Shown here: one piece after another, positions 13,701 to 34,100 of the stretch | Layout: the number at the start of each line of letters is the position of its first letter | Numbering within the stretch: position 1 is the stretch's first letter | Notes under the pieces: model-generated | Databases searched by the model: none | What the model was told of the DNA's origin: nothing | Seen by the model: the letters and a program-made list of their open reading frames with translations, nothing else | Program-made: the position numbers and the translations under genes | Assembly (NCBI RefSeq): GCF_037042905.1 | Contig: NC_087251.1 | Coordinates: forward strand, 22,878,001 to 22,942,000 | DNA: 64,000 nt | Source of the DNA: Lytechinus pictus | Taxonomy: Eukaryota | Direction of reading: 5' to 3'

Positions 13701-16700
13701 ACTTGGTTTTCAGGTATAGAGGGAATTGGAGGTAAGTAGCAATACATGAACATGACACCCGGGGGGAGGGGGGAGAGAAGGGAGAGGGCATTCAAATTAT
13801 ATTTTGAAGGGGGTGTGTCTCACTAAACCCTGAAATTGGGGTCTAGTGAACGCACTACTAAGGTAAAATACAGGGTCTTGGGAACTAAATATATACTGGG
13901 TGGTGTGAAAAACAAGGTCTACGGAACAGGATCACGGTACAGTAGGTACGGTGCACATAAAAGCGCTGTGCATGTATATGTGGGCGCTGACGGTGCATGG
14001 AGCTGCTAACGGAAGGAGTTGTGAAGCTGTGCGTGCAGCTCTCGCATGCAGTGCCCGTGCTGGACAATTTTGGCAGGGCTAGGGAACTGAGACGTTTTAA
14101 CATGGGTCTTCCGAGCGTGGCGGGTGGCTTCTGAATGGAACTTTTGTCATTTGGACTATCTAGAGAACTGAAAATTACGTCTGAAAAAGGGGGTCATCAA
14201 AGCGGCATGTCCCCGTTCCACCAATATATGTGAGTGCCCCCCCCCCCCCGGGACATGACACAGATTTGCTTTAATTGGTTTATCATACCAACTAAAAGCA
14301 GATGGTTCTACTTGAAACAAACTTGTCTTCATAATTCCAAATGAAAACAGTATTCTCTTGACCAGAAGAAAAGCCATCAGCTATTTTATTCTCTTCAAAT
14401 TGAGCATAGACTCTGGAAATCTCTTGAAATCTGCGAAAACCCACAACCGGGCCATGTCTATGTACAAATGAAAATTGTCACCAACCTATTGTAGAAAGTG
14501 TGTGTTTCAGATCGTATACAAATAAACCTGCATTTCTATACAGTAACAAATTCAACAAATAATTGGGAATGATTTCTAAATATGTTCATGTATAAGAAAC
14601 AGAAAGCTCCATTAAAGTTTCATGTTCTTCTTGACCAGAAAGAGACAAAAAAATTGCAAAAATCATATTGTTTGTAAACAGGAAATTCTATGGTTTAAAA
14701 AATGTTTTAAAGTTACCACATCTAAAATGTGAGTCGTTTATAGACATCTGCTTTGAAAAAGAAAACTATTTGGGCACAGACTGGATTTGTGGAATTTGCC
14801 TGGTGTAACAAATTGACCGCAGATGTCCCTTCTAATATTATTTTTATTCAGTCAGAGGAAAGCTGGAATCACCATCAATGAGGTGCATACTCTGAACAAG
14901 TGGAATGCCTCTGGCAGTCTCGCCTGCATTACGCAATTCAATGTAGCAGAAGTGCTGCCTCTGAAAACAGCTAATGAATAATAATTCATAGAAGAAAACA
15001 CTAATATGATAATTGATATGTCCATTCACCCAAAATGACCTTTGACCATGGTCATGTGATCTAAGACATGTGCAAAACAATCATACTTGATTACCCTTAT
15101 GTCGATGTTTTATGAGCTAGATCCATAAACTTTCTAAGTTATGATGTCAATTCAACACATACTCCAAACACGGCCAGAGGTCATTAACCTTGAAATGACC
15201 TTTGATCTTGGCCATGTTCCTGAAACGCGAAAAGGGTATTCAGGGATAAATTGCTGCTCTTATGTCCAAGTTTCATGAACTAGATCCATAAACTTAATAA
15301 AGTTATGATGACAATTCCACAAATACCCCCAACATTACCAAAGTTTGTTGACCCTAAATGACATTTGACCTTGGTCATATGACCTGAAACTCACACAGGA
15401 TTTTCAAGGATACTCGATTGCTCTTATGTCCAAGTTTCATGAACTAGATCCATAAAATTTCAAAGTTATGATGACAATTCCTCAAATAACCCCAACATGG
15501 CTAAAGTTTGTTGACCCTAAGTGACCTTTGTCATGTGACCTGAAACTCGCACATGATATTCAGGGATACTTGATTGCTCTTATGTCCCAAGTTTCATGAA
15601 CAAAATCAATAAAATTTCTAAGTTATGATGGCAATTCCTCAAATACCCCTAACATGGCTAAAGTTTGTTGACCCTAAGTGACCTTTGACCTTGGTCATGT
15701 GACCTGAAACGCACATATGATATTCAGGGATACATGGTTGCTCTTATGTCCTGGGGTGGTATCCTGAAAATTGTCTTAATTTTTCTTGTAACTTTTCTTG
15801 TAAGTCAGCAAGATAACAGCTCGCTAAAATTCTCTTAAATTGGTATTCTGAAAATTGTCTTACCTCTATAAGGACGTCCCCTATTTTATCTCTGACAAGC
15901 CCAATATTTCATCAACAACCAATCATTAAGCTTGCTATATGCTTAGGTCAACCAATAGAAGCGTCTCTTCTGAAAAATAATAAAGCACATTGTTGATATG
16001 AGGCGTAATTTCTTTGCGCCCCCGACGCTTATGCTTGTGCGCTTCTGTGCTAAAAATACACATGGCTCTTCTCAAAGACATATTTTCTCTGAAAAGATTC
16101 ATCGTCTCGAACACTAATTTTTAATTGCTGAAAAGTCTACCAATCCGTCGTTATAAGGTCTTTGGAATGTCTTCTTTTGTAAAATATGATGTTCTTGCGG
16201 GATGCAGCAAGAAATAATTATTGCAGACGGACAAATATCGCATGCAACAATAAGTTACAATAGCCCCCTACCTCTTGTAAATTTTCTTGTATTTTGCAAG
16301 GAAGTTAACAGAACGCAAAGATAAGATAATTTTTAGAATACCTCGATTATATCTCGATATGTTATCTTGCGCAAAGGGATATTTATGCGCCGTTTTTAAC
16401 TTTACACATAATTCTAGCTCTGACAACATACGCGCCTAGAGAAAGTTACAAGAAAAGATACAGGAATTTTCGGAATACGGAATTTATTGTAACTCTAAAG
16501 ATACTGCAATATTTCTCTTAAGACAATTTTCAGAATACGGCCCCAAGTTTCATGAACTAGATCCAGAAACTTTTAAAGTTATGATGACAATTCCTCAAAA
16601 AAACCCAACATGGCCAAAGTTCATTGACCCTAAGTGAACTTTGACCTTAATCATGTGACCTGAAACTCGGGAAGGATCTTCAGTGATTCATTATTACCCT

Positions 16701-19700
16701 TATGTCTAAGTTTTATGAACTAGGTTCATATACTTTCGAAGTTATGACAACATTTCAAAAACTTAACCTTGGTTAAGATTTTGATATTGATTCCCCCAAC
16801 ATGGTCTAAGTTCATTGACCCTAAATGACCTTTGACCTTGGTCATGTGACCTGAAACTCAGGAAGGATGTTCAGTAATACTTGATTAACCTTATGTCCAA
16901 GTTTCATGAACTAGGCCCAATCGCAGTTTCACAGTTGTGTGTGCGGAAATGGTAGTTTGTTAACAGAAATCTACTCCCAACTCCCTGCGCTATGCAAGTA
17001 GTTTTTACGAACGCCATGCATGAGTCGTGTTTACTTTTTTGCACATGATTGCAACAACAGCGCTAATTGGCTGATTCCATGCCGTTAGTTTGGCTCAGTA
17101 CTGTTGTACGTTTCGGAGGTACAGAGGAATTTCTCAAGATTAGTGGACCCCCTGCTGAGATTTTCCAGACATTCCATTTCCGTCCTGCTTGCGAAAGCCC
17201 GTAATCATCCTCTGAGTAGGTGGCAACAATGTTCTGGGCTGCGTAACACAAAGATTAGCGATCAATCGCTAAATGAACTGACCAATCAATATCAATGTTA
17301 CACGCGCATTTGGTTTAAAATTCTGACCAGGAACCAATCAGTGTGGTGCTTTCATATTTGCAATTCATCGCAAACATTTGTTAGCCCAGATCTTAAGTTT
17401 TATTACTGCAAACTATTAGACTATCCCAATCATTTGGTATTAAACTATGATCAGTCATTATTTATGCATACAAGTGCATATTAAATGAATAGACATGTGT
17501 TTAATATCAATTATACATAAATGGGAGCTTTCTGTACCGACTTTTTCTCTGAATTTCTCTTATCAAATCTGCAGAGTAATGGTACTGTCTGTGATTTATT
17601 TTGAGTAAAGGCTTTGAAATTATGATTATCTATGTAAATCTAGTGTTAAAGCTTTGACAACGAGACATTATCATTAAAATCAGATGCTGTGAAATAATGG
17701 TATACAGACTGAAATCTGAGTATGGTGAAAATCACATGTAGACACAGTTAAGCACACATGGGTGATGGGTACAATGTACAGTGTAATTATACTGAAAAGA
17801 TCAAACAGAATGTCCTGATTATTGTGCTCATTACATGATAATTACCAATTTTCTACTGCTACCATGCGGCACTTATGTTTTATTTATGCACGGCTGCACG
17901 CAAACACATTTAATGTTAAGTCTGTTTTCAAATTATCTTATGCCATATTACCATAAATTTAAACTTTCAGGATAAAATACAGATCTCTTCTGGTGAATTA
18001 TTTCCAGAGAGTAACAAATAACACCACTTTCCCTGCATCCATTCAGGCCAAGTGTTATTGATTGTCATCTTCTTTTTTTGACAAATCAAATTTTAAAATG
18101 ATAAAATGTGTTTCTAGTGCAAGACATGTGATTACTTTCAAAATGATGAATTTATCATACATTTTCCCCATGAGGAATTATTCATAGAAAATTGTATAGA
18201 CCAGTACAGAGGGAAGATTTCAAATGAACTATTCATTGCACACGAGACAACGCAGCTCTGGGGAAAACCCACTATTCTCAGATGAGTGGGGAAAACCCAG
18301 TTGTCTCAGAGTAGTGGAAAAAATATACCCACTGATTACCTGTCTGCTCCTGCTGGTACAAATCCCTGGATGAAAATCATCTTCCCTGGGGCCATGGATC
18401 CTCCAAATATGGAGCTCACATAGGGAACAGCCTGGAGAGAGAAAGAAAGTCAGTAAGAGATANNNNNNNNNNNNNNNNNNNNNNNNNNNNNNNNNNNNNN
18501 NNNNNNNNNNNNNNNNNNNNNNNNNNNNNNNNNNNNNNNNNNNNNNNNNNNNNNNNNNNNNNNNNNNNNNNNNNNNNNNNNNNNNNNNNNNNNNNNNNNN
18601 NNNNNNNNNNNNNNNNNNNNNNNNNNNNNNNNNNNNNNNNNNNNNNNNNNNNNNNNNNNNNNNNNNNNNNNNNNNNNTAACGTTGCTCTCATGTGATGTC
18701 ACTGAATCAAAAAATTGAAAATTCATATCATACTTGTTTGTAATTTTCATAAAAAATTCATGGATTTGTATTTCTGATTGTATCTCAAGCTCTCGACATC
18801 AGGTTGGACTTCCCCTTTAAAAGGGTAGAGCGTCTGACCAATTAAACTGACCTCATGTTTTGCCCATCTTCCTCATTTGGCCATTACATACCATCTACAA
18901 CCTTGCTAGCTATCTTAGAGCTATCTTTGCTTACTGGCTACCAGCTGTCTCTGACCCTCAGATTGTGAATGATGATCTCTAATTATAACATTGTCTGTCA
19001 TCCAGAGGTCATATCTAAAAGGTCATTTTCCTAATGCAACAGTAATCCAACTGAAGCGTGTGCTTTTCTAAGTGCCTGGATCTCAGCCTAAATTATTTCA
19101 TTCATTGATTTACAGGGGAATCCTAACCAAATAGAAAGTTTATTTTGATATGGAAATAAAAAGAAAAATGTCAGGGTTTACCAATGAAAAAAGATCCGAC
19201 AAATAATAAGAAACTTGACATTAACATGGATTTCAAATTTGGTGCAAGTATAGGCCTTTGTATTTGATGGTACTGTGCTGTAGGTTAGGGATCAACTAAA
19301 CTCCATTTTATCTAAAAATAAATCTTTTTCCAAAGTGTTACTCAGAAACTCAGAAATTTTTTGATTCTATGATCAGGTACATGTAACATACTTTGCTCCA
19401 ATACTGTGGAGAGAAAGGGAAGGTGCTTGAAAGGAATTTACGAGAAAACCACAAATTCCTCAAAATCAAGTCGAAGAATTTCTTGCCCATTTTTTTCTCA
19501 AACTTTCACCATTGAAGATAATTTTCTATGTATTCTGCTTTCGCAAAGCAATTTAGCCAAGTTTGGATATATATATATAATATAATTATAATATATAAAA
19601 AGAAAACATGTTTGTTTTTTTGAAGCAATTTTAGTTTTATAATGTTCATTTATGGTTTCATACGTGTATGATTTCAATAGAATTTCCTGCATAAGTGAAT

Positions 19701-22700
19701 TTTTACCCCCCAATAACTTGTTACTTTATATTGAAAGTACTGATTTTTCTGTCACAAATTTCGAGAAATAGTGCACTTTATTTCACACTCAACCCACTCA
19801 AAATTTCTGCCTCATTACACCATAAATGGGAATAGAAACTGCATGGATTGCTATAAATTCTATAGTTTTTATGATATACAAATACAATGATTCAAAACAC
19901 TTTACCATTTACAAATGTAATAGTAGTAATTATCTAAATAAGCAATATTAACTCCTATACAGTATGTACCTTGTATGTAATAATCACTTGTCTCTTTTAT
20001 AAAAACAGAAAACAAAGTGCAGCTACACATACATGTATGTACAGCCACTTGCAACATGCAGCACTCCGGTACCCACTTGTACCCCATGTATCTGATATAC
20101 AATGTACAAAAAGCTGTATATGAAAAATCACCCAAGTTATATGTACATGTACATGTACATATAACTTGGGTGATTTTTCATACAGCTTTTTGTACATTAT
20201 TCATGACTTAACTGCGGACTATTTCTTGTGTTAGTGACATTTCAACATTTTTTATTGTGATAAGCTCCTAACAGTTGAAATATGTGTGTGTGTTTTAAGC
20301 TTAGTAAAAATTTTCTGAGCAAAAGTCCTGAAATGATGTATTGATTTTAAATTTGCTTGTACAACCTGGCAAGAGCCTCAAACAAGTTACATCGCCATCT
20401 GGATAACACATGACTTTTTTTTCTTGTACACTGTACATGATTTTCTTATTTACAGTATACCCACACGATTGTTGCAGGTGCTGGGTTAAGTGTGGCAAAT
20501 GTATGTACAATGAAGATAGGCCTATTTTTTTCTGAGGCATTATTTTATAGTGAGATTTGAAGCACCGACCCCATTGATCAGACTAGGGAGTTATTTGCCA
20601 ATTCACTTTAAATAATTTTTTGGTACTTCCCAAACCAAAGGACAGAAAATCATAGGCCTAACTGTTTATAAAAGTATGAAGTAAAAGTTGAACTGAAAGG
20701 ATTTTACTTCTTCGATATGGTACAACAGGCTTTAAAGATGATTGTGATGCATGCAGATCTGCAAATATCATAGCAGCAAAATAAAACTACTATCCTAAAG
20801 CAATCGACGTTGTCCCCAATTCCAGGACATTTTCCCACAATTCCAATTCCAAGCTCCAGTGAATGCTTTTATCATGCTCATATTCATGTGAAATTAATCA
20901 ATGACTGTAGCCCTGTAATGCACGTAACATTTACTATGGCAGGCCTACTCTGTTGCAATGCATCAATTTAATTGCTCGCATGCACAAGCTTTAAAGGAGA
21001 ATGAAACCCTTGGAGCAAGTTAGTTTAATAAGAAAGCAGAAAAATCAAAGAATAAGATTAACAAAAGTTGAGTAAAAATTCCAACAAGCAAGAAAAAGGT
21101 TTAATGAGCATTTTCTCATTTTAATGATTTTGTCGAACAATTCCTGTAAGGAATTCCAGTTCCTCTCATAAAAAAAGAACATTTCAATAGACTAGATCAA
21201 AGAGTATTTAAGAAAAGGGGAAGTTGCGTGTGTGTGACATCACATGGCTCAAGATTCAAGTACTCAAGTAACTTTCTTCCTATTCATTCAATCTTCAAAC
21301 TTTCATTAACCTGTTTCTTTGATTGTTCTCTTTTATATGAATTCAACTGGTATGAAGGGTTTCATTCTCCTTTAATGCTAGTCTCCTACTGAACATCACA
21401 CATTATGTATCCCGAGTAGGCAGTTCACCATGGATGTATCCAGAACAACAATAATTCCTCAGCTGATGCTTTGTACATTGTACATGTAGCATACAGTATA
21501 CGTGCAATACTGATAGATATGCTAACCATCCATAATACAAAAAATTGTTAATTTAGACGGCAAGCATTTTGTGATGAGAGATGAATGTCATCCCCCACAC
21601 ATACATGTACACTTCTATGACCTTTTAATGCATGCATGGAGTGCTGCTTCATGTTTATGATTGCTGCATCCCTCTGATCGCTGATATGTACATGTTAATA
21701 CTGGTCTGTTGTTAATTCAGTTTCAAGAAGATGCAAACTTTAAATGTGAAAGGGGTGCTCCAGCAATGAGTAAAATCAAGGAAGGAAAATGAAGGAAAAT
21801 ATATTACATGTATGTTCATCATAGTTGCCAACTCTACTGCTTCTTTGTTGAAAATAGTTTAAACCCCTTTGTAAATTTTCAGGAGTCCAAAAAGAAAGAC
21901 ATAGGGAGAAATGAAAAAGAGAGAGAGAAAAAAAACAAGTGGAATGCCTCTGGCCGTCTCACCTGCATCACGCGATTCAATATAGCAGCAGTGCTGATTT
22001 TGAAAACTACTATAACTCGCACAAGATGTTCAGTGATACTTGGTTACTCTTATTTCCACGTTTTATGAACTAGACCAATACACTTAAATAGAGATATGAT
22101 GGCAATTCAACAAATACCCCCAACGTGGCCAAAGTTCTTTGACCTTACATGACCTTTGACCTTGATCATGTGACCTGAAACTCGCACAGGATGTTCAGTG
22201 ATACTTGATTACTATTATGTCCAAGTTTTATGAACTAGACCAACACACTTTCAAATTTATGGCTGTAATTCAACAAATACCCCAATTTGGCCAAAGTTCA
22301 TTGACCCTAAATGACCTTTGACCTTGATCATGTGACCTGAAACTTGCACAGGATGTTCAGTAATACTTGATTACTATTATGTCCAAGTTTCATGAATCAG
22401 ATCCATAAACTTTCAAAGTTATGATGGTAATTCAACAGATACCCCCAATTCGGCCAAAGTTCATTGACCCTAAATGACCTTTGACCTTGGTCATGTGATG
22501 TGAAACTCATGCAGGATGTTCAGTGATACTTGATTAACCCACGTATGTGAATGCAGGTGCAAGCTCCCTAGCATATGTATAGCGTCTTGACCGAGAGAGG
22601 GCTCACTCATCTTTAAAATTTAAATACCCCCGCGAAACTCGAACTTGTTGCTACCGGGTTGCTACTGACGCTTTGCGCGATATTGCTCTCACATCTAGGT

Positions 22701-25139
22701 CATTTGGGGAAACCCCAGAGAGGTGGCCAACCTCATCTTGTAATGAAAATCAAATATATGATACACATACATTCGTAGAAAACAATGGTAACATTCAAAA
22801 CAAGAAATCAAAACACCGGCAATCAATTTTGAATCAGCCGGCGGCAAGCGGGTGTGTCGGTCCCATATACTCGTAGGATATCACAGTAAATATTATCAGT
22901 ATTTATGAGGTTTCTTTAAAAAAAAATATTACCAATCTACAATTTTTCATACCTTTGTTTTGGTTTTATATCAAAATTGACTGGTATTGTTTAAACTGTC
23001 TTTCATTTCTAGCTATCCTACAGTTTTTTGTGCACTCATCTTGTGTTGTTGGTTTTGACCTTGTGTGGTGGTTTTATTTGTTCTTACTGTACTGTACACA
23101 CATTTAAATGCATGGAACAGCATATTAAGTGTTTGTCATTGTTGTGTCGATTTTGTGGGAGGAGGGTTATAACTGAATTGGGAAAGAAGGGGCATTCGTA
23201 TAGTGTATCAACCTACCATCAGATAATTCTAGAGAAATTTAATATTGACATTTCAGAGGACACTTTAGATATACACCCAAACAAATTTTGCAGCACATGC
23301 TATTGCCATCTCACAATCAAGAAACCATTACATTGGACACCAAAAAAATGGGACACACATAGGAGAACATCACACTGTCATACATGTACACATTTTAAAG
23401 AAACACAAACACCAGGCAGACCAAAGAAAAGAAAAGCTGGTGGCCGCCCCCCTGCAACAACAACACCCCAGTCTCACTTTTCTCAATTAGGAGTATCACT
23501 ATCAGGAACAACAGACAATCAAAAATACAACATCAATCAAGACACATTTCACATTGATAATTCACTACAATTCCTTTTGTGTTGTGTTTGTAGGTCTGTT
23601 GTGTCATGTCCTGTCGAGTCACCTTGTAACCACCTGTTTTGTCTTGACTGTATATCGTCTCTCTTTGTCAAAGTGTCTGTTAGCTGTCCTCTTTGTAACA
23701 TTCAATTTCATTATTCTCAAACACACACACCAGCCGCATACATCATCACATTACTACAAAATCTTCATGTTCAGTGTTCACATTGTAAAACATCCCTTCA
23801 CTACACCCAAACATCAGGCCATTCGTGTCATACTCGTGTAAACTGTGACCATACATACGCAAAATGTACGCAAATGGACCTCAACACCCAACAACGCCGG
23901 CAGATAGCCTCTGAATACCTCAAATGTCAGATGGCCAAGTCACATGATGGTATGTCAGCCAGCATAGGTTTAGCAGGTCGTGGAAAGGTAAATGCAAAAG
24001 TCTTATCTCCTAGCTACCGGTAGTTTAAAGTAACAATCATCATCACATATTTCAAACTTGCAGAAGATTTTGTGGAAGACGAACAAGTTAGGGTCTCAAA
24101 ATATATCATTCTCTTTATCATTGTCAGTCAAATTTATTTCAGAAGTTTCAACATTTAAAAAAGTTATTTCAATAGTCCCAGTAGATTTGAATTATGCAAG
24201 GTTGATCAGGTTGAATTCACATATAAAGGCAAATGATTGGGTATATATTACCCAAGTAATATTAGTAAATATGTATTTTATTATATACATATTATATATA
24301 TAATTTCAGTTTCATACATTTAAGTTTTCATACTGTAAAGAAATTAGCCATTAATGTATTTTAGTTCACAGTATTAGAAACAAATAAAATAATCATAATG
24401 GTGCATATATCATGTAAGTATAACAACAAAACTTTGCCCCCCCCCCACCAAACAAAACTAAAAATAACAAAAGAAAACATGGATTTCTAGAAAGTCATAG
24501 ATATCATTTAATTGCTATAATTTAACTATTTTCTAGATACACAACCCTGTATGTTGAATCCTCATTAGATATACATGTATTCTAAAAGATTTTAATAATT
24601 TTACACCATTATCTTGAATAATATAATGTTATTTTGAAAATGAAACTTCAGCGGTAACTTGCCATCTATATATTCTTACAGCCTATGAGAGCTTTCAAAA
24701 TTCCAAGCAGCATCGTACCAAGTACAACCTGTTCATCATCCACCCTCCGTAAAAGAACGTCAATAATACATCATGTAAGGCAAGAGGTTTCTGGTGGGAG
24801 AGAGGCAGCCGATACTCAACAGCAACATGAAGTTTCCCAATCTGCAAGCATCACAGGGATCTTGGGCCCACAACCCCTCCATATTCCATCAAGAGACATT
24901 ATGGAGCTGAAAAGCTTCTTCAGCTTGAGTTGGAGAAAGCTACGACGTTTGAAGAGGTGACTTGAACAATCTTTGTTATGGACATTCATGTAATTACACC
25001 CCGGAAGAGGGTACTCAGATTTGGTTTGGACGGGGATCTGCAGCTGAAGAGTTCATACCCATACCTATTAAGTTAATGGGTCATTTAGTCAGAAAGGAAT
25101 AATAATAATAACAATAATAATAATAATAACAATTATAAT

Positions 25140-25172
<33 letters not shown>

Positions 25173-28100
25173 CTGCTCAACATTTGCATCACATGATACG
25201 TCTCTATGGACTTTTAAAGTACTTTGGATGTTCTTACCCCGGCTTTAGCCCCTGGAGCCTTTATACAGATCTCAGTGCATTCAAGGAATGAATCCTACCA
25301 GGTACCCACTTACAACACCTGGGTCGAGTGTGGCAAATGTAGATTAATATCTTGCTAAAGGACATTGGTACTGTGGTGGGATTTGAACCCCAGATCTCGT
25401 GGTTCACATTCCCTTGACTTATCCACAGCACCTTTACAGGGTACCAATTAAAAGGGATTTCATTTTTTTGTAAAGACCACTTTTGCATCTCGAATGATAT
25501 TCTCAAACGACGAGAATATATACGGGCGAGAATATCATTCTTTAAATAAAGTTACCCATGTTTTGGAGGTTTTCTGGCACAAAACATTACCCCATGCTTT
25601 GGGATTTCTTTAAAAAAAGTGACCCATTAGAGTGGCACATATCCCCATATACCTTATAAGATGAGTATTCCCCCCCCCCCCCACCCCACCAGGAATTACA
25701 CCTCATACTAGATTAAGTCATTAATACAATAAAAATACAATACCTAAATATATTTCTTAACAGCTGGCTAAAAGAACGGAGAATTTCTACAGGAAATGAG
25801 AGGGAAGTGAGGAGACTCCAAGATGATGTGGTAAAAAACAACATTACCGGGGAACTGTTGCCTCTCCAACAAGGCTCAAGTGAGACTGGCATGGAAATTA
25901 AGGAGACCCCGGTAGTAACAGTAAGCAGCCTCAGTGCCCTTGTCAAGGACTTACTAGAGGAATATGATCGGTGAGTTCTACCTGTGATAATGTAAACAAA
26001 ACCATTAAAGCAAATCATTAACATAACAAAAGAAGAAAGATATTTTAAATATCATTAAAAATGATTACTGAATGCACCAATTACAAAAAAAAATGATAGG
26101 GATGAATTCACAAGAGAGTTTTAAACCTCCTTTGTGAATTTGGGCCATAGTGTTTCTGATATTGATATCTATTCCTTATCCTCAGAAGCATTATGATTTT
26201 ATTCTGGTAATATAATTTTATTAATTAAACCCATTTAAATCAAATTAAATAGCCCTTTGAATAATGCAATAATATCCTATTTCTACATATCTACAGACTT
26301 GGAGAGCTCACCTGGCATGACGACCACATCCCCGAAGGAGAAATTTGGTTGAAAGTGGGAGGCGACAAAGGGGGAGGAACTTTCAAGCTAATGGTGCAAT
26401 TGGCCAATGTGAAGCGACCCAATAGCCTCCACAACACCCGGGTGATCATGTTGTTCCCTGGATCTGACTCCACTTACAACCTCGATGTCTCTCTGGAGAC
26501 CATTAGATGCCAAATTGCTGATTTGGAGTCAATGTCATGGCGGTGTGTTTTCTTCTTCTGTTGAATAAAATATTAATATCCATAAAAATCAAAAAGATTA
26601 CCAGAACCTATAAAATTTCAATGAGTAAGATTTCTAATGTGAATGTAGTTATTTGGTATGTGAATTTTATTGTGTCTATCTCATATTTTGTCTTTATACA
26701 GAGGGAAAACCATGAAAGTCTTTGCCTTCGGCGACTATGAATATCTGACCCGCATGTATGGACTCACTGGCCCCAATGGTAAGCCTTACTTTCATAAACA
26801 TTATATATACATATATATTACTTTGATTGAATAGAGGTAATTAAAAAAAAAAAATAATTTCTCTTGACTTGTATCCCCATTTTTTTTTTCTTCACCAGGC
26901 CGTCATTGCTGTCTCTACTGTGAGATGACCAAGAAGGAAATGGCTGACCCACCAATGGCTGTCCCCCGTCAGCGAAGCCTGCAGACCCTCAAGGAATCCC
27001 TGAACCACTTCAAAACCTGTGGCATCCCAAAGGAATCTAATAACGTCATCAGATCCCCATTCTTTGACATTCCAATAAATAGGGTAAGATATTTAAGAAA
27101 AAAATGATTTCAATAGCCAAATGCTTAATCAGTAGCCAGAATATAACTCTCACCAGGGGTGGGGTGGGTGTGTAATCGGATCTGTATCTTACCACAGACC
27201 TTTATGCTTATCGGGTTATAGCTACTTTAAACCCCTCAGGAAGACAAACATTCAGAACATTCAAAAGTGAAATCTTAATTTCATCTGCAATGATGACAAT
27301 GAAAATTGTTATTAATACCTCTGATATTATAAGCCCTTTTCTCTTATTTATCAGGTCTGTCCTCCTGGGCTCCATATCTCCCTCGGGGTCTTCTTGAAGC
27401 ACTTCAACTCGCTCTGCCAAGCATGTCACACTCTGGACCTGGAGATTGGCCAGTCCTTGGCAAAAAGTCCTACAGACCAACTGGAAGCAAAAGAGGCCTT
27501 CAAACAGCAGCTGAAGAAGCTGAGTCTCCAGTCAAGACTGAAGCTTGCTGAGGAAGAACTCCACGACCTCATGGACCAGCACATGATGGTTGGACTTCTT
27601 TACCCTGAAGCTGAACCGCCCACCCTCATCCTGGAAATGGCTGAAGAGAAGAAGAGAGAGAAAGTTACACTGGTTAGTATCTTGGATGTCACACTGGCAG
27701 TATTGTAAATACGAGTTGCATACGTTTTAATCTTAAATCATGTATAGATGTACCAAATGCATCTTTAACTAAAATTAATATAAAATTTAACATATAAAAT
27801 CTTTTTTTATTTGTAGGAGAAGGAAATAGGCAAAATACCAGAAATGACAGTTCACTCTGGACCAACTAATGTTGGTCTAGAAGAAGCACTACAGCAGTTG
27901 AGAGTGAGCAGACAGGCGTACCATGGTCGTTCATTTGTAGGGAACCATGTACATAAATGTTTACAGGTGAGTAGAGTATATCATGAAAAGTAAGAACATT
28001 CCTGAAATATACTACTATATTTACACAAATTATAGTAATTCACATTGTCTTTCTTTTGAATAATACAAGAAAATATAAATTCTAGATGTTTGCTTCTTGC

Positions 28101-31100
28101 CTAATGTCCACTTTATTCTAATAGTAAATGTCACTATCCTTTTACTTTGAACCTATCTTCGTGTACCTTGTTCCAACAGCCTGAGAACACTGATCTGATC
28201 ACTGCTGCTATATCAAAGAAGGTACAGTCACTCTGCCCCAACGACCGGGACCTCATCCAGAAGGCAGAAGATATCGCCAGCAAGTATAATACTTTGCTAA
28301 AGCTGTTCGGGGCATGCCACCGGGGTATAAACACGGGTACTTTCCTGGACGACTCAGTCATCGACAAGCTGGGTAAGAGTCTAAGAGATCATGATCATAA
28401 AGGTCAGCTGCAAAAAAAAAATGAAATGCAAGTAATTTTCATATCAAATAAATAAAGAGTGACAGAGCAAGAAAATATCAATTGACACTGAAGAAGCAAA
28501 AATATTACTAGAAAATAACATTTATAGATCTCTATTTTTGTTTTTTCTATCGTTTATTTACTGACAGACAAAGACATCAAAGAGTATATGTTGTTCTACC
28601 GTCAGAACTTCCCCACAGAGAGCGTGACCCCCAAACAGCATCTATTGCAGTATCATGTCATCCCCTGGTTCAGAGACTGGAGAGCAAGCCTTGGGATGAT
28701 GGGTGAACAAGGGGGAGAGTCGGTCCACTGCCAACTCAACAACATTTCAAGAGATTTGAGGGGCTACAACGATGACCTCAAACTCAATATACAATGTGTA
28801 AAAAATCAGTGGATATTAAGTAGCCCCTCAAATTACAATAAGTTCAGTTAGATCCACTCTAAATACCCTCTCAATCTCGGAGTAGAGAAGTAGAGAAGTG
28901 TACACTGAATTCTATGTATACAGAGCTTGTGGGGTCTTTAATTTTTTTTATTCATCTTATTTTATTCTATTATTTTTTATATTTTTTATTTGCAATCTAA
29001 GAATATATTCTTGCCTTGGGAATTAAACTTAGAATTAAATAAGAGTGTATATAGCATTAAACAAAAAATTGATTCGAATGGCTTTACTGAAGTAGGTCAC
29101 CTTTTTGTTCTCTGTAATAGACATGCAGTAGAGAATTATGTTGAAACTTTAATCTATGACTATATTTCAAAAACATTGTATAGAATAGAATGATTGATTA
29201 GAATGCATTATGTATTTACATATATAGTCTAATAAAGTCTGTTCTGCAATATCTGGAATCTGCAATATCAGCTAGATACCAGTATCCATTAGCGGATGAA
29301 GTACAGAGAATCAGAGATACATGTACTACTGCCAGTGTGTAGGATTTAGGATCAGTGGACAAGTATCCAGACTTATTATTATTATTATCATCATTATTAT
29401 TATCATCATTAATTATTATTACTTTTATTTGTATCAATACATTTAACTTCATCAGGCTGTAGACATTTGTTTATGAACAAAAATCAGAAACATTTACGTC
29501 TGGTCACAAAGAGTGTACCAATATTTATGTCTGGATAACTTGTGCACTAGACTAATGTGCACATTATTGCATTTGACTTTGACAAGTTCGGTTGATATTG
29601 AGAATAGAGAGAGAATAAAAGAATAAATACATCAACTATGACAGAATTTGAGAAAACAGTGGCTGGAATAAGGTCTGTGATGTTAATTGTCTTTGTTAAT
29701 GCAGATTTCTAAACATGATGGGTGATCATAATCATATGGATGTGATAACTGACAAGCTGTTTGGAATCACTTCTGGGTACATTTTTGTAGAAAAAGTCAC
29801 AGAATTTTGACAGACATATATACATGTATACACAGTTGTAAATTTAGGAAACACAAGAGCTAGAGCCAACAGCCCACAGAAACTCCCCAACAGAGTAATA
29901 TTTTCCCAAGGGATTATATTTTCCAAAAAGCCTGCAGTGCTCAGCTGAGGGAAAATATAGTCCGAGGGAAAAAATAAAAAATAAAATAACATACATGTAG
30001 CATTTCCATTGGAGATCCGCGTGCTCAAGTTGCTGCAGCTCTTATCCCCTCTAGGCTTTACTGTAGAAGATGTGATGGCATTTGGACGTTCATGTACCTC
30101 TACTCAGTATCTGTAATAGACCCAGGCGCGTAGCCAGGGGGGAGGGGGGGGGGGCGCTAGCCCCCCCCCCCCAAAAAAAAAAAACGCCAGCCAAAAAGAG
30201 AGAGAGAGAGAGAGAAAAAAAAAAGTAAGAGGACGTAAAATTATATAAAGAAAAAGCAGACAAAGAAACATTTTTTAATATTCAGACAAGGATTATAAGA
30301 GTCGAGAACGGTACAACGAATCATCTTCTTACTCGAATAATTTAATGAAATGTCAACACTCCCCCCCCCTGCACCCACACGCTTCGCGTGCTCACTACCG
30401 CCCCCCCCCCCCTAAAATAAAATCCTAGCTACGTGGGTGAATAGACCTATTAAATTTAATATAATACAACATTAATACTCAAAGACACTAATAAATTAAA
30501 TAATACTAGGTCTAGACCTAATAATAATATATGCCTATTATAATATACCATTACCAATTACAATAACAATTACATTTCTATACTATAGTATAGGCCCTAG
30601 ACAATACGCATTACCATTACATTAGCATTGACTCTCTACGCTTTAAATCAGCTGGAGTGGGCCCTACGGCCCCTACTCCCTTGCTCAAAATTATACCCGA
30701 CCCGGAACATCTAGCATTCTGTAGACTCTACTTCTAGTTCTAACTTCTAGGACTAGGCCTATCATAAAAATAATACAATTGGGTCTATTATTATGTTAAC
30801 AACACAATTGAAGTGCCTTGTTCAAGTTGTTCCACGATTTAGCCAAAAGTGTGATACAGCAACGCTGTTTCGTGTTAGGGCCGACTGTGTATACGCGTAC
30901 CCCCGACCAAGTTGTCTCAGTCATCGAAGTGGGACTGGGAGTCTACGCCTACGCAAACGGCGGTGGAGCGTACACCGCGCCGCTGTAATCGAACATCTGC
31001 GGCTTTTGGCAAACAGCACATTGTATTTTACAGTAAGTTAGACAAGTAAACATACTTTGATCAAGATCACATTCAAATCAGACACTCTCAAACATTCATC

Positions 31101-34100
31101 TCCATTAAAATCACGATCTTAACCGACTACAGTGCTTGAATGGTGACGTCATGTTCAGACAGTGGCAATTTTTCAACCAAAAATCTTTAATATTTACCTA
31201 AAAGTAGCACCAACCCAAGGAGAAGTCTAGTTGATCAAAAAACTGTAGGATGGTCAAAAATGAGAAGAATGAGAAGTATATGTCCTCGTTCCCTATTATG
31301 CAAAAGCTAAAAATAGTAAAAATTATAGTTTTTCCTAAAACGCATATTTTGGGAAGGTTTAAAAATTGAAATTTTATTTAACAATTTTTTGGCAAAATAA
31401 GGTATTTTATCATAAAGGTATAATTCAAAAAATAGATACGATTGGTAATGATTGCTACCCTCGAAATAATAATATGAATACGTATTTCAGGGGTATGTTT
31501 TTGTTTCACATCATGTTTTAGTCATTTTTGATTGGTAGTTTGGCAAACATGTGGCAACTTTTGTTTACATTCTTCCTCGGTTCGCGACGATTCGACCTAC
31601 TTTGTGGATGACGTCATAAGGCAAAATGGATGCGCACGTTACGCGCCCCTACAGTAAATTACGTGAACCTTATGTATAAGTTTCATGAACTAGGTCCATA
31701 TATTTTCTAAGTTATGATGACATTTCAAAAACTTAACCTTAGGTTAAGATTTTGATGTTGATTCCCCCAACATGGTCTAAGTTCATTGACCCTAAATGAC
31801 CTTTGACCTTGGTCATGTGACATGAAACTCAGGCAGGATGTTCAGTAATACTTGATTAACCTTATGATTAAGTTTCATGAACTAGGTCCATATACTTTCT
31901 AAGTTATGCTGTCATTTCAAAAACTTAACCTCAGGTTAAGATTTGGTGTTGACGCCGCCGCCGCCGTCGCCGCCGTCGGAAAAGCGGCGCCTATAGTCTC
32001 ACTCTGCTATGCAGGTGAGACAAAAACCCTTAAAGAAATCAAATCCAAATAGACTAATTTTTTTCTACAATTCTTGGGCCAGATTTTGTGAGGTGAAAAG
32101 TATCCATCTACCAGAATACGGTCCCTCAGACCCAACATGGGGGAGGGGGGTAGTGCAGCATTCCAGTGCACCATGGATTCTGAAAATCTGTCACATTTCC
32201 TCCATTTGGAACTTTTTATGAAAAAAAAGAAGAAAATAGTCAATGAAGGTACACTGTAGTTTATAAAGGAAAATTTGACCAAAAAATGAAATAAAAGAAA
32301 TTATGAGCTATGAATGTTATCAAGTTAATAATATTTATGAAGATAAAGATGCCAATGTCAATGTAACCCAGATGTATGATGTCACACAACTATCCCCCAA
32401 TATGAAAACATTTCTTTAAACTTCTGTATTTACTCATTCTAATGCTAGTGTAAACTCTTCGTTCACAATATATTTGCAAAACCTAAATATTACATGGCCT
32501 CCCATATTGAAGAAGAATACCTGATCAACAGAAAGACTCTATATCTTGGCCCAAATGTACAATGATATCACACATCTTGCTACATGTAGCATTGCCAATA
32601 TGACAATCTACAAAGCATGAGTGATTTATGCTCATGAATAATTTCCTTTATTCCATTTTGCTTAAACCTTTATTGATCTGATTCTTTGACTTTTAATTTA
32701 TTTTTAATAATGGTTTTGTTTTAAATACCGGTACAATTTAACTGGTTTTAAGGTTTTCATTCTCTGAGAAAAGAGCACAACTGAGATTACTAGGAAACCA
32801 TATGAATTTGAACTCAGCAAATTAAATAAGTCACAAAAATATTATGTACATGTAAACAGCAAACGTGTACCAAAAGGGATTCAGGGAGCAAGTGCATAGT
32901 GACAAGCATTCAAACAAATATATCTTAATAATAAATGACTACCTTTACTTCTCAAATTAATGAAAATAAATGCCATTTAATCCCTTTCTGCATTCTGGGC
33001 TCCCACAACCCAGAATCCATTTAGTAGCATTTCCGATGAAAATTGTTCATTCACCTGGAAAGCTATTTGAACGTTGATATTGATCTCACAGACGGAAGTG
33101 ACATGTAACATTGACATGTGACCAGTGGCTATTCAACAAATGTAAATTTATACAAGCAACCTCCATGCATATCTTAATAAAATCTGTGTTTATCATTCTA
33201 ATGCAAATTTGCTGATTACAAATCAAATACCGATATACATACAAGCTTGAAATACTTTTGAGAAGGTATACCTTGGATCACATGCTCTTTAGCTACATGT
33301 ACCCTTTATGTGGTTATGAATCTACAATAAGATTTCAGGAGATATATTTTCCTTTGAAAATTCACCTTATATTCATTGAATGGAAAAAACTTGCATGTAC
33401 TTGAAGGAAGAGACTTCTTGTTACTTTCTTTAAGAACATAATTTTTCTCCTATTCCAAAATAATTTATTTGGTATGTTTGATTGGCAAAAACGAATCATG
33501 CTAATCGTATCACATAACAATCAGCACTGATAACAATGCATAAATTAAACAACAACCTCCTAGGCATTGTTAAACATACATGTACATGTAATACACTATT
33601 CATGTAGTACAATAATCATCTATTCAATTGTTTACAAAAATATGACCGTACAAATGTTATTTAAAGAAATATCACTCTTTTTGTGTAATGACAATTGGGG
33701 TGTTTTTTAGATTTAAAAAAAAAAGAAATATTGCATAAAAATCTATCAACGACAAAATTAATGATTTAGAGTGCAAGGAGCGCCATATCGACCTTACAAA
33801 AAGGAAAATAAATAGGAAAGCTTATTAAGTAATAATCTAATCAAATTTGATATATCCATTTCAATACATTGATTAGGGAGTTTGTACCTCTTTTTTATAA
33901 ATGCAGTATTCAAGTTGTGTATTGGTCGAAACATTCATATATATGGCCATAAAGGTGGGCCTGCATATAGGTGGTAGGCCTATCGTTACATTTGTGCGAC
34001 TAGCACAGAAATGATTAAAGGAATACAATTTTAAATACATGTGCTACATGGGCTAATTTGGTATCATATTAAAGGGAGACTTTACTTTAAAGAAACAGCA

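What the first reader, a model, noticed from the sequence alone, without database searches (positions are those of the whole stretch)
23112..23987. A single exon encodes the whole RAG1-like non-core module (CND/Chapa zinc domain + RING + zinc finger), ending at a phase-0 intron
Seen: exon 1 (292 aa) has H-x7-CRFCG...D-x4-HP-x2-FC-x2-C...W-x2-H...C-x2-C, then [13 protein letters not shown], a C3HC4 RING ([24 protein letters not shown]...CPLC) and [11 protein letters not shown]...H. Known: the same order (CND, RING, zinc finger) forms the RAG1 N-terminal region, and the RAG1 RING is an E3 ligase. Inference: a one-exon module bounded by a phase-0 intron could be swapped between DDE cores. This transposase may also carry ubiquitin-ligase activity.
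Basis: partly seen in the sequence, partly recalled or inferred. Interest (0 to 1): 0.75.

Follow-up and report, generated by a model that had tools for sequence, protein, structure and literature searches.

The report
RAG1-like first exon of Chapaev transposon
This exon is the first of ten in an intact, recently mobile sea-urchin "Chapaev" jumping gene, and it encodes the same zinc-domain, RING and zinc-finger front end as the immune recombinase RAG1; this kind of protein is already described, so the finding is a well-documented new copy, not a new kind.

Summary
Window 23112-23987 (+) is a 292-codon exon that starts at ATG and ends at a phase-0 GT donor. It encodes a Chapa/NZD double zinc domain, a basic GRP motif, a C3HC4 RING and a zinc finger. 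A profile of 84 relatives hits full-length mouse RAG1 at E 2.5e-41, colinear with RAG1 101-391. It hits the RAG1 NZD structure at 3e-19, so the stated refutation condition is not met.

The exon opens a 10-exon, 936-aa transposase gene in a 9,126-bp element (22540-31665). The element has CACGTA...TACGTG ends and a 4-bp target duplication. A second copy on another chromosome differs by 14 substitutions. A S. purpuratus copy keeps the frame and every splice site (dN/dS 0.15).

The phase-0 intron is ancient, with the same position and phase in crinoid, hemichordate and Hydra relatives. It is absent from an intronless sponge copy.

The "module swapped between DDE cores" inference is only weakly supported. 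The core of a close relative also folds like RAG1 (Foldseek E 1e-11, TM 0.6), so the whole protein is colinear with RAG1. Ligase activity is plausible but untested.

The architecture is published (2005, 2015, 2026), and this scan had already noted the family in this genome.

The parts
22540..31665 (+). Whole Chapaev-type DNA transposon, 9,126 bp
   Evidence: Similarity to a second copy in the same assembly (L002) and to a S. purpuratus copy (L001) starts and stops exactly at these positions.
22536..22539 (.). Left target-site duplication, AACC
   Evidence: The same 4 bases follow the right end at 31666-31669. The other two insertions have GGAT/GGAT and ATGC/ATGC.
31666..31669 (.). Right target-site duplication, AACC
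22540..22556 (+). Left terminal inverted repeat, CACGTATGTGAATGCAG (imperfect)
   Evidence: 12 of 17 bases match the reverse complement of the right end, and the first six, CACGTA, match exactly. The ends are conserved in the S. purpuratus copy.
31649..31665 (-). Right terminal inverted repeat, ending ...TACGTG on the + strand
23112..23987 (+). Exon 1, 292 codons: the finding itself. It holds the entire RAG1-like N-terminal module.
23112..23405 (+). Chapa / NZD-like double zinc domain (aa 1-98). Ligands are H4, C12, C15, C60, C63, H83, C89 and C92, the type I pattern.
   Evidence: The family profile hits the RAG1 NZD structure 21wb at E 3e-19 and mouse RAG1 from residue 101. AF2 pLDDT is about 90-97 over most of this stretch. 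The ligand list comes from bioRxiv 10.64898/2026.01.24.700457.
23412..23450 (+). Basic GRP-GRP stretch [13 protein letters not shown] (aa 101-113). It looks like an AT-hook or a nuclear localisation signal.
   Evidence: The family consensus is KGGRPxKxxxxGRP. It lies where RAG1 has its basic importin-binding stretch. The Pfam RAG1_imp_bd hit is weak here, at 17.3 bits, but above the cut-off in relatives. The function is inferred.
23580..23696 (+). C3HC4 RING finger (aa 157-195)
   Evidence: Pfam zf-C3HC4 covers aa 157-195. It aligns to the RAG1 RING. The structural match to 1rmd has Z 10.5.
23769..23831 (+). Zinc finger after the RING (aa 220-240: C222, C225, H237, fourth ligand uncertain)
   Evidence: It aligns with RAG1 zinc finger A (VKCPAQDC...H). 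RING plus finger together match the RAG1, LNX2, TRAF2 and TRAF6 RING-ZnF units.
23886..23939 (+). Predicted helix (aa 259-276) in the tail of exon 1, before the conserved ...GG(Q/K) exon end
   Evidence: AF2 model. A suggested alignment to the start of the RAG1 nonamer-binding domain was not significant when tested alone.
23988..24681 (+). Intron 1, phase 0, 694 nt, gtaaat...ttacag. A stop lies 11 codons into it.
24682..24956 (+). Exon 2 (linker region), ends in phase 2
25764..25970 (+). Exon 3, ends in phase 2
26297..26542 (+). Exon 4, 246 nt. It holds the first catalytic Asp, D476 (26364-26366, GGDKGGG). Pfam DUF1280.
   Evidence: The exon has the same length in Antedon and Ptychodera.
26702..26778 (+). 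Exon 5, 77 nt. It holds the second catalytic Asp, D546 (26733-26735, FGDYEY).
   Evidence: The 77-nt exon is the same in Antedon, Ptychodera and Hydra.
26899..27083 (+). Exon 6. It holds the C(2)C pair C565/C568 (26910-26921).
27355..27672 (+). Exon 7 (PPGLHISLG motif and a long helical insert)
27817..27966 (+). Exon 8 (GNHVHK motif)
28180..28372 (+). Exon 9
28568..28851 (+). Exon 10. It holds the H(4)H pair H867/H872, the catalytic Glu E893 (28717-28719, GEQGGESVH) and the stop codon.

Best explanation
Window 23112-23987 is exon 1 of the transposase gene of an autonomous cut-and-paste DNA transposon of the Chapaev group (the CMC / 'CMCT' clade). The element is intact and moved recently in this sea-urchin genome.

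The exon encodes, in one piece:
- a two-zinc Chapa/NZD domain
- a basic GRP-rich stretch
- a C3HC4 RING
- an adjoining zinc finger

This module is homologous to residues 100-380 or so of RAG1.

A conserved phase-0 intron joins exon 1 to nine further exons. They encode a DDE core with D476, D546 and E893, plus a C(2)C and an H(4)H zinc pair. In a close relative this core is predicted to have the RAG1 fold. The full product is 936 aa.

The following steps are inferred, not shown:
- The basic stretch brings the protein into the nucleus.
- The NZD and the RING-finger unit act in DNA or chromatin contact and in pairing of subunits.
- The RING works with an E2 enzyme to ubiquitinate the transposase itself or nearby proteins, as the RAG1 RING does.
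- The core cuts at the CACGTA ends and inserts with a 4-bp stagger.
For: Exon and motifs.

RAG1 homology of the module:
- Single sequence against PDB: RAG1 is best, at E 1.5e-7.
- The 84-sequence profile hits mouse RAG1 at E 2.5e-41 over RAG1 101-391, the NZD structure at 3e-19 and 1rmd at 1.8e-18. TRAF6 comes next at about 1e-16.
- The AF2 model has pLDDT 86. Its best structural match is 1rmd at Z 10.5, with 107 of 116 residues aligned.

Gene model:
- Ten exons, 2,811 nt, with no internal stop.
- All GT-AG sites and the open frame are kept in L002 and in the S. purpuratus copy, whose only exon indels are in frame.
- dN/dS is 0.15 overall, 0.30 for exon 1 and 0.11 for the rest.
- It is colinear with 951- to 1040-aa proteins of Antedon and Sycon.
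- Intron positions and phases are identical in Antedon P0019, Ptychodera P0205 and Hydra P0184.
- The same module and core form a single uninterrupted reading frame in the Sycon copy.

Transposon nature:
- Similarity breaks exactly at 22540 and 31665.
- Three insertions have three different 4-bp duplications and CACGTA...TACGTG ends.
- The two copies in this assembly lie on different chromosomes and differ by 14 substitutions plus a few indels.

Core:
- Pfam DUF1280.
- Family-invariant D, D, C..C, H....H and E.
- The AF2 model of the relative's core has pLDDT 93. Its top 44 Foldseek hits are all RAG1 or BbRAGL (E 1e-11, TM 0.6). HzTransib follows, then a drop to Hermes at TM 0.23.
- Three weak colinear sequence matches to amphioxus RAG1L cover the C(2)C motif and the H(4)H-E motifs.

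Literature: Chapa followed by RING in Chapaev subgroups (PMC4411706); Chapa type I and II compared with the RAG1 NZD (bioRxiv 10.64898/2026.01.24.700457).
Against:
- Public annotation splits the locus into a 303-aa and a 561-aa gene. NCBI models the S. purpuratus copy as a 308-aa single-exon protein. Splicing of exon 1 to exon 2 in sea urchins therefore rests on comparative evidence alone.
- Pfam RAG1_imp_bd is below its cut-off for this very sequence, at 17.3 against 23.3 bits.
- No Repbase Chapaev consensus was available for a direct comparison.
- Transposition and ligase activities are untested.
Confidence: 0.88

Rival explanations
1. Exon 1 is, at least some of the time, a product in its own right. 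If intron 1 is retained, a stop 11 codons in gives a 303-aa NZD-RING-finger protein without a catalytic core. That protein could regulate the element or act as a free E3 ligase. The phase-0 intron would then work as a switch between the two products.
For: - The frame reads through the donor to a stop at 24021-24023, giving 303 aa.
- NCBI annotates the S. purpuratus copy as a 308-aa single-exon 'V(D)J recombination-activating protein 1-like' protein.
- Many echinoderm annotations hold separate DUF1280-only proteins of 610-700 aa.
- Exon 1 is under its own purifying selection, with dN/dS 0.30.
Against: - Split models are what gene callers produce when RNA support is thin.
- A short read-through tail (median 7.5 aa) is expected in any AT-rich intron.
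- The tail is not conserved between the two species.
- Several relatives encode the module and the core in one uninterrupted frame.
Confidence: 0.15
2. One reading: the module is a portable exon. RAG1-like and Chapaev transposases share it because it was moved between different DDE cores by exon shuffling at this phase-0 boundary.
For: - The boundary is ancient and always phase 0.
- In Amphiura P0010 the module is an internal exon with phase 0 on both sides, joined to CXXC-finger exons with no transposase core.
- The module matches RAG1 at E 2.5e-41, while the core is not found by HMMER with a 6-sequence profile and only at E 0.035 with 45 sequences.
- Canonical Transib transposases lack the module (bioRxiv 10.64898/2026.01.24.700457).
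Against: - The core has the RAG1 fold end to end, including the C(2)C and H(4)H zinc pairs in the same order. No swap between unrelated cores is needed. PMC4411706 argues for one ancestor that carried both halves.
- Cysteine-rich zinc domains are easier to detect at long range than helical cores, so the contrast in E-values need not mean different ages.
- The Amphiura model spans 82 kb with repeated units and may be a chained prediction.
- Intron positions in RAG1L genes could not be compared here. The known teleost and sea-urchin RAG1(L) intron lies at human Gly460 (PMC1131882). That is about 30 residues downstream of where a weak alignment places this boundary.
Confidence: 0.15
3. It is a domesticated host gene, or a RAG1L/Transib-type element, and not a Chapaev transposon.
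For: - NCBI names relatives 'V(D)J recombination-activating protein 1-like'.
- The coding sequence is under purifying selection.
- The core has the RAG1 fold.
Against: - The element has terminal repeats and a different 4-bp duplication at each of three unrelated loci, and a near-identical second copy.
- The duplication is 4 bp, not the 5 bp of Transib/RAGL. The ends read CACGTAT, not an RSS-like CACAGTG.
- Nothing in the other 2.8 kb of the element could be a RAG2-like gene. The longest frame there is 98 aa.
- The core hits Pfam DUF1280 and has no HMMER hit to the RAG1 core.
Confidence: 0.03

Closest known systems
Chapaev transposases with a Chapa domain followed by a RING finger (Kapitonov & Jurka 2007, Repbase Reports, as cited in PMC4411706; type I Chapa domain of bioRxiv 10.64898/2026.01.24.700457)
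   Same: - N-terminal double zinc domain, then a RING, then a DDE core with C(2)C and H(3-4)H motifs.
- Ends that begin with CAC, and a short target duplication.
- The ZFb ligand pattern of one N-terminal His plus His-Cys-Cys, as in type I and in RAG1.
   Different: - No Repbase sequence could be compared directly.
- The 4-bp duplication and CACGTA ends differ from the 3-bp TWA of Chapaev3 in Anolis (PMC3014272).
- In the papers read here I did not find the ten-exon structure, its conservation from Hydra to echinoderms, or the RAG1-like predicted fold of the core.
Sea-urchin 'RAG1 N-terminal domain-like' proteins of about 305 aa (Kapitonov & Jurka 2005, PMC1131882)
   Same: - Same species group and same length.
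- The same three motifs plus the RING: H-x3-L-x3-C-R-x-C-G, D-x3-I-h-P-x2-F-C-x2-C and W-x-p-h-x(3-6)-C-x2-C.
- Recently duplicated copies.
   Different: In 2005 they were described as separate proteins, not linked to any core or transposon. Here the roughly 300-aa frame is shown to be exon 1 plus intron read-through of a 936-aa transposase gene inside a bounded element.
RAG1 / RAG1L N-terminal non-core region (NZD 89-223, basic stretch, RING-ZnF dimerisation domain 261-384; PDB 1rmd, 21wb)
   Same: - Same domain order, and all eight NZD ligands.
- RING and zinc finger A align.
- The best sequence and structure matches in PDB are RAG1.
   Different: - It lacks the first 100 or so residues of RAG1 and the vertebrate helix H2 insert. 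The profile alignment shows a 20-residue gap there.
- There is no RAG2 partner gene.
- The core is only about 12% identical to RAG1 in the structural alignment of a relative.
- It has a 4-bp, not a 5-bp, duplication and no RSS-like heptamer.
N-RAG-TP element of Aplysia (Panchin & Moroz 2008; recalled from memory, not read here)
   Same: A transposon whose transposase starts with a RAG1 N-terminal-like region. An Aplysia californica relative (P0130) is among the hits.
   Different: It was not compared in detail. It comes from a different phylum, and its exon structure is not known to me.

Membership tests
Chapaev group of the CMC/CMCT DNA transposons | Terminal inverted repeats that begin 5'-CA(C) and end (G)TG-3' | tested here: met
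   The ends are CACGTATG... and ...TACGTG in the window, in L002 and in the S. purpuratus copy. The criterion comes from PMC12730594 and PMC3014272.
Chapaev group of the CMC/CMCT DNA transposons | Short target-site duplication (2-5 bp in the clade) | tested here: met
   Three independent insertions have 4-bp duplications: AACC, GGAT and ATGC. The 3-bp TWA of the Chapaev3 subgroup is not met, so this is not Chapaev3.
Chapaev group of the CMC/CMCT DNA transposons | [quoted passage not shown] | tested here: met
   D476, D546, C565-x2-C568, H867-x4-H872 and E893 are invariant or nearly invariant across 45 relatives. The criterion comes from PMC12730594.
Chapaev group of the CMC/CMCT DNA transposons | N-terminal Chapa (NZD-like) zinc domain | tested here: met
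   The profile hits the RAG1 NZD at E 3e-19, and all eight ligands are present.
Chapaev group of the CMC/CMCT DNA transposons | Clusters with named Chapaev consensus sequences (Repbase) in a transposase tree | not testable with these tools
   No Repbase sequences were at hand. The assignment rests on the features above and on Pfam DUF1280.
RAG1 / RAG1L (RAGL, Transib superfamily) | NZD, RING and zinc finger A in this order at the N-terminus | tested here: met
   A single colinear alignment covers mouse RAG1 101-391 at E 2.5e-41.
RAG1 / RAG1L (RAGL, Transib superfamily) | Core recognisably similar in sequence to the RAG1 core (about 25-35% identity) | tested here: not met
   phmmer with P0019 and the 6-sequence core profile give no RAG1 core hit. 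The 45-sequence profile reaches only E 0.035 against BbRAG1L.
RAG1 / RAG1L (RAGL, Transib superfamily) | RAG1-type core fold | tested here: met
   This was tested on the relative P0019:440-951, not on the window product. The model has pLDDT 93. The top 44 Foldseek hits are RAG1 or BbRAGL, with E down to 1e-11 and TM about 0.6.
RAG1 / RAG1L (RAGL, Transib superfamily) | 5-bp target duplication, RSS-like CACAGTG ends and a convergent RAG2-like gene | tested here: not met
   The duplication is 4 bp and the ends are CACGTAT. The longest other frame in the element is 98 aa.
RING-type E3 ubiquitin ligases | Eight zinc ligands, C3HC4, with canonical spacing | tested here: met
   C157, C160, C172, H174, C177, C180, C192 and C195 are present. 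Pfam zf-C3HC4 scores 21.9 bits against a 21-bit cut-off. The ligands are invariant or nearly so in the family.
RING-type E3 ubiquitin ligases | Hydrophobic E2-contact positions (after Cys1, on the central helix, and Pro after Cys7) | tested here: inconclusive
   V159, L184 and P193 occupy those positions by inspection. Which positions matter is recalled from the c-Cbl/UbcH7 work, not tested here.
RING-type E3 ubiquitin ligases | E2-dependent ubiquitin transfer | not testable with these tools
   This needs a biochemical assay.

The most novel reading that the evidence does not exclude
The phase-0 end of exon 1 is an ancient joint, older than the split of cnidarians and bilaterians, at which the NZD-RING-finger module behaves as a free-standing unit. 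On this reading the module is:
- made alone by intron retention, as a 303-aa regulator or ligase;
- captured into host genes, as in the brittle-star CXXC-finger fusion;
- possibly the route by which a RAG1 ancestor and Chapaev elements came to share a front end that is far more alike than their cores.
Probability: 0.12. Interest if true: 0.65.

Novelty: new member of a known kind. Interest (0 to 1): 0.35.

Why it matters
The RAG1 N-terminus is needed for normal immune development, yet its function is poorly understood. Its zinc domain was solved only in 2026.

This locus provides a natural, intact and recently mobile transposase with the same front end in the type I ligand pattern, the same RING-finger unit and a RAG1-fold core, but no RAG2 partner. 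It could serve to ask what the NZD and the RING do for a transposase.

The locus also corrects a common annotation error. The roughly 300-aa "V(D)J recombination-activating protein 1-like" genes of echinoderms and the separate 610-700-aa DUF1280 proteins appear to be the two halves of one transposase gene, split at intron 1.

The conservation of nine introns from Hydra to sea urchins is unusual for a mobile element. The domain architecture itself is already in the literature.

Tried and rejected
- **RNA evidence.** After that I masked those 40 bases in every script and sent them to no search tool. The share of words held by the small "RNA?" contig sets is 0.24-0.52, and exons make up 0.47 of the stretch. 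That is suggestive, but I draw nothing from it.
- **Word searches.** The search with exon 1 found only the locus itself and one S. purpuratus relative, because of the length filter. The search with P0019:1-300 found only P0019, so no RAG1L proteins were obtained. Intron positions in RAG1L genes could therefore not be mapped.
- **The Atlas look-up** was busy.
- **Does the tail of exon 1 plus exon 2 equal the RAG1 nonamer-binding domain?** The profile alignment to zebrafish RAG1 runs into GGRPR...EEGGDVKSV. That profile contains intron read-through residues, and P0019:215-440 alone finds no RAG1. Rejected as unsupported.
- **Core against RAG1 by sequence.** phmmer and the 6-sequence profile gave nothing. 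The 45-sequence profile was marginal. Only the fold search was decisive.
- **NZD fold search.** The whole-exon model's hit lists were filled by the RING-finger part. The NZD part was not searched alone, so NZD homology rests on sequence.
- **More copies or short derivatives in the window.** A search with the left end found no further match.
- **Two further locus look-ups** (Patiria, Asterias) found nothing on record.
Full report
**Observation.**

The + strand of the window has an ATG at 23112 and an open frame to 23987. The sequence there reads GGAAAG|gtaaat. The 876 bases make 292 codons, so the intron is phase 0.
- H4-x7-C12RFC15G
- DIH55P-x2-FC60-x2-C63
- W80-x2-H83-x5-C89-x2-C92
- [13 protein letters not shown] at 101-113
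- a C3HC4 RING at C157-C195
- a further finger, C222-x2-C225...H237

Pfam finds the RING just above its cut-off and RAG1_imp_bd below it. With the single sequence the best PDB match is already RAG1, at E 1.5e-7. Full-length mouse RAG1 aligns from residue 146 to 363.

**What the exon belongs to.**

BLAST against a S. purpuratus relative (L001, found through protein P0002) shows 72-88% DNA identity exactly from 22539/22540 to 31665/31666. Against a second locus in the same assembly (L002), identity is near complete over the same range.

All three insertions begin CACGTATG and end TACGTG. Each is flanked by its own 4-bp duplication: AACC here, GGAT in L002 and ATGC in S. purpuratus. The two copies in this assembly lie on different chromosomes beside different genes. 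They differ by 14 substitutions and a few indels over 9.1 kb. The element is therefore a cut-and-paste transposon that moved recently.

**Gene model.**

Full-length relatives from the crinoid Antedon (951 and 975 aa) and the sponge Sycon (1040 aa) align colinearly to ten open segments of the + strand. I chose the splice sites with the best consensus that keep the frame. This gives the following exons, 2,811 nt or 936 codons in all, with no internal stop:

| Exon | Coordinates |
|---|---|
| 1 | 23112-23987 |
| 2 | 24682-24956 |
| 3 | 25764-25970 |
| 4 | 26297-26542 |
| 5 | 26702-26778 |
| 6 | 26899-27083 |
| 7 | 27355-27672 |
| 8 | 27817-27966 |
| 9 | 28180-28372 |
| 10 | 28568-28851 |

All nine GT-AG pairs and the open frame are kept in L002 and in the S. 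purpuratus copy. That copy has only two in-frame deletions in exons, against about 1,800 gap columns in non-coding parts. dN/dS between the window and S. purpuratus copies is 0.15 overall, 0.30 for exon 1 and 0.11 for the rest.

Exact mapping of annotated proteins onto their loci shows the same structure elsewhere:
- Antedon P0019 has the same ten exons with the same phases (0, 2, 2, 2, 1, 0, 0, 0, 1). Its exon 1 is aa 1-303 and ends ...NGK|, and its 246-nt and 77-nt exons are identical in length to those here.
- The hemichordate Ptychodera P0205 matches for the exons its model has. Its exon 1 ends ...TRSK| in phase 0.
- The cnidarian Hydra P0184 also matches. Its exon 1 ends ...GGPR| in phase 0.

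Among 143 short database relatives, 72 end with a TGGQ-V-type motif and a median tail of 7.5 residues. This is the signature of a GTN donor read through by gene callers.

There are exceptions. Antedon P0025 has an extra phase-1 intron between the Chapa domain and the basic stretch. Sycon P0153 has no introns at all.

I worked beside those 40 bases from then on.

**Homology of the module.**

An exhaustive search with exon 1 found 909 relatives at E <= 0.001, most of them about 270-340 aa. NCBI names several of them "V(D)J recombination-activating protein 1-like".

A profile of 84 of them (A1) searched against PDB sequences gave these results:

| Target | E-value | Note |
|---|---|---|
| Mouse RAG1, full length | 2.5e-41 | One alignment, RAG1 101-391 |
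| RAG1 NZD structure 21wb | 3e-19 | |
| 1rmd | 1.8e-18 | |
| TRAF6 | about 1e-16 | |

The RING-finger unit alone is therefore only slightly nearer to RAG1 than to TRAF6-type units. The zinc domain in front of it is specific to RAG1.

In that alignment the eight zinc ligands of the mouse NZD fall on H4, C12, C15, C60, C63, H83, C89 and C92. The mouse ligands are H102, C110, C113, C175, C178, H206, C210 and C213 (bioRxiv 10.64898/2026.01.24.700457). This is the "type I" pattern of that paper. The alignment also shows a 20-residue gap where vertebrate RAG1 has its extra helix.

The AF2 model of exon 1 has mean pLDDT 86. A search of about 48,000 representative chains put the RAG1 dimerisation domain first. 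It scored Z 10.5, with 107 of 116 residues aligned at rmsd 4.6, ahead of LNX2 (9.2), TRAF2 (8.9) and TRAF6 (8.8). Foldseek ranked the same group, with TRAF5/6 and LNX slightly ahead by E-value.

**The core.**

Exon 4 hits Pfam DUF1280, as do the full-length relatives. A word search with the core of P0019 found 55 relatives in echinoderms, a hemichordate, amphioxus, Hydra, sponges and an abalone. Some carry RING and RAG1_imp_bd domains in front. Many are 610-700-aa models that begin about where exon 2 begins.

Across 45 of them the invariant residues are the D of GGDKGGG, the D of FGDYE, C-x2-C, H-x4-H and the GEQGGE motif. In the window product these are D476, D546, C565/C568, H867/H872 and E889/E893. 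This D-D-C(2)C-H(3-4)H-E pattern is the one said to unite EnSpm, Mirage, Chapaev, Transib and RAG1 (PMC12730594).

By sequence the core is barely RAG1-like. phmmer and a 6-sequence profile find nothing. The 45-sequence profile reaches E 0.035 against amphioxus RAG1L, in three colinear pieces. Two of them cover C(2)C and H(4)H...E, and they place E893 on the second E of SEGNE.

By predicted structure the core is clearly RAG1-like. The model of P0019:440-951 has pLDDT 93 and pTM 0.89. Its top 44 Foldseek hits are all RAG1 or BbRAGL (E down to 1e-11, TM about 0.6, about 560 columns, about 12% identity). HzTransib follows (E 3.6e-5, TM 0.5), then Hermes at TM 0.23.

**What this means for the interpretation.**

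The domain reading is right, and it is already known:
- Sea-urchin proteins of about 305 aa with exactly these motifs were reported in 2005 as RAG1 N-terminal-like proteins of unknown context (PMC1131882).
- The Chapa domain followed by a RING in Chapaev subgroups was described in 2015 (PMC4411706).
- Chapa domains were compared structurally with the RAG1 NZD in 2026.
- This scan also noted a damaged 10-exon copy of the family elsewhere in this genome, and the whole element on this window.

What the present work adds:
- The roughly 300-aa "gene" is exon 1 plus read-through.
- The exon boundary is ancient.
- This copy and its twin are intact and young.
- The core as well as the front end is RAG1-like in predicted fold.

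The swap idea gains some support. The joint is old and phase 0. A brittle-star gene model carries the module as an internal exon with phase 0 on both sides, behind CXXC-finger exons. The module is also far better conserved relative to RAG1 than the core.

The colinearity of both halves with RAG1 is more simply explained by descent from one ancestor that already had both, as PMC4411706 proposes. The Amphiura model spans 82 kb of repeated units and may be a chained prediction.

I could not compare RAG1L intron positions. The literature places the shared teleost and sea-urchin RAG1(L) intron at human Gly460, which is not where a weak alignment puts this boundary.

Ligase activity is plausible. 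All eight ligands are present, hydrophobic residues sit at the usual E2-contact positions, and dN/dS is 0.27 over aa 151-245, the RING-finger stretch. It remains an inference.

**Verdict.**

The finding is a new, well-preserved member of a known kind, and interest is moderate to low.

Noticed in passing
window 22540-31665 compared with L001:9036-17775: Between the window element and the S. purpuratus copy, four-fold degenerate sites differ at 23.5% (77 of 327). All nine introns together differ at only 9.9% (1,751 gap-free columns, each intron 7-13.5%). Silent exon sites are thus about 2.4 times more diverged than introns. Higher CpG in exons (2.0% against 0.7%) may explain part of this.
   Followed up: partly
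L008:2001-84083 (Amphiura filiformis, protein P0010): This is an 82-kb gene model of 1,239 aa with five CXXC zinc fingers. It also has two full copies of the Chapa-RING module, a third RING and no DUF1280 core. One module is a 756-nt internal exon with phase 0 on both sides that starts two codons before the module's own Met. The repeated exon pattern suggests tandem units merged into one model. It could be a host gene that captured the module, or a chained prediction.
   Followed up: partly
L002:9429-18597 (same assembly, other chromosome): This is a second, equally intact copy of the element beside a uricase gene, with target duplication GGAT. The only coding differences from the window copy are three clustered changes in exon 9: D809E and two silent ones.
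   Followed up: yes
window 23112-28851, with public annotations of relatives: Gene callers split this gene at intron 1. Here they call a 303-aa and a 561-aa product. In S. purpuratus the call is a 308-aa 'RAG1-like' protein. In several echinoderms there are separate 610-700-aa DUF1280-only proteins. This looks like a systematic annotation artefact of the family, unless the two halves really are separate transcripts.
   Followed up: partly
L006:3001-6123 (Sycon ciliatum): The sponge relative encodes module plus core (1,040 aa) in one uninterrupted frame. The cnidarian, hemichordate and echinoderm relatives share up to nine introns. Whether the introns were lost in the sponge lineage or gained before the cnidarian-bilaterian split is open.
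   Followed up: partly
window about 13112-18395, - strand: The public gene call next to the element has a galectin (Gal-bind_lectin) domain. Its range ends about 4 kb before the element's left end. I did not check whether the element lies in an intron of that gene, as another note on this window states.
   Followed up: no
window 23000-28950: Near-identical sequence is held by runs labelled with four different coded organisms (A-D), with shares of sampled words between 0.25 and 0.75. The element, or very close relatives, may therefore be present in several related species.
   Followed up: no
window 25093-25171 and 29373-29445: These are AT-rich ATA/TAA microsatellites inside intron 2 and in the 3' part of the element. 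The one in intron 2 is 36 nt longer in the L002 copy.
   Followed up: no
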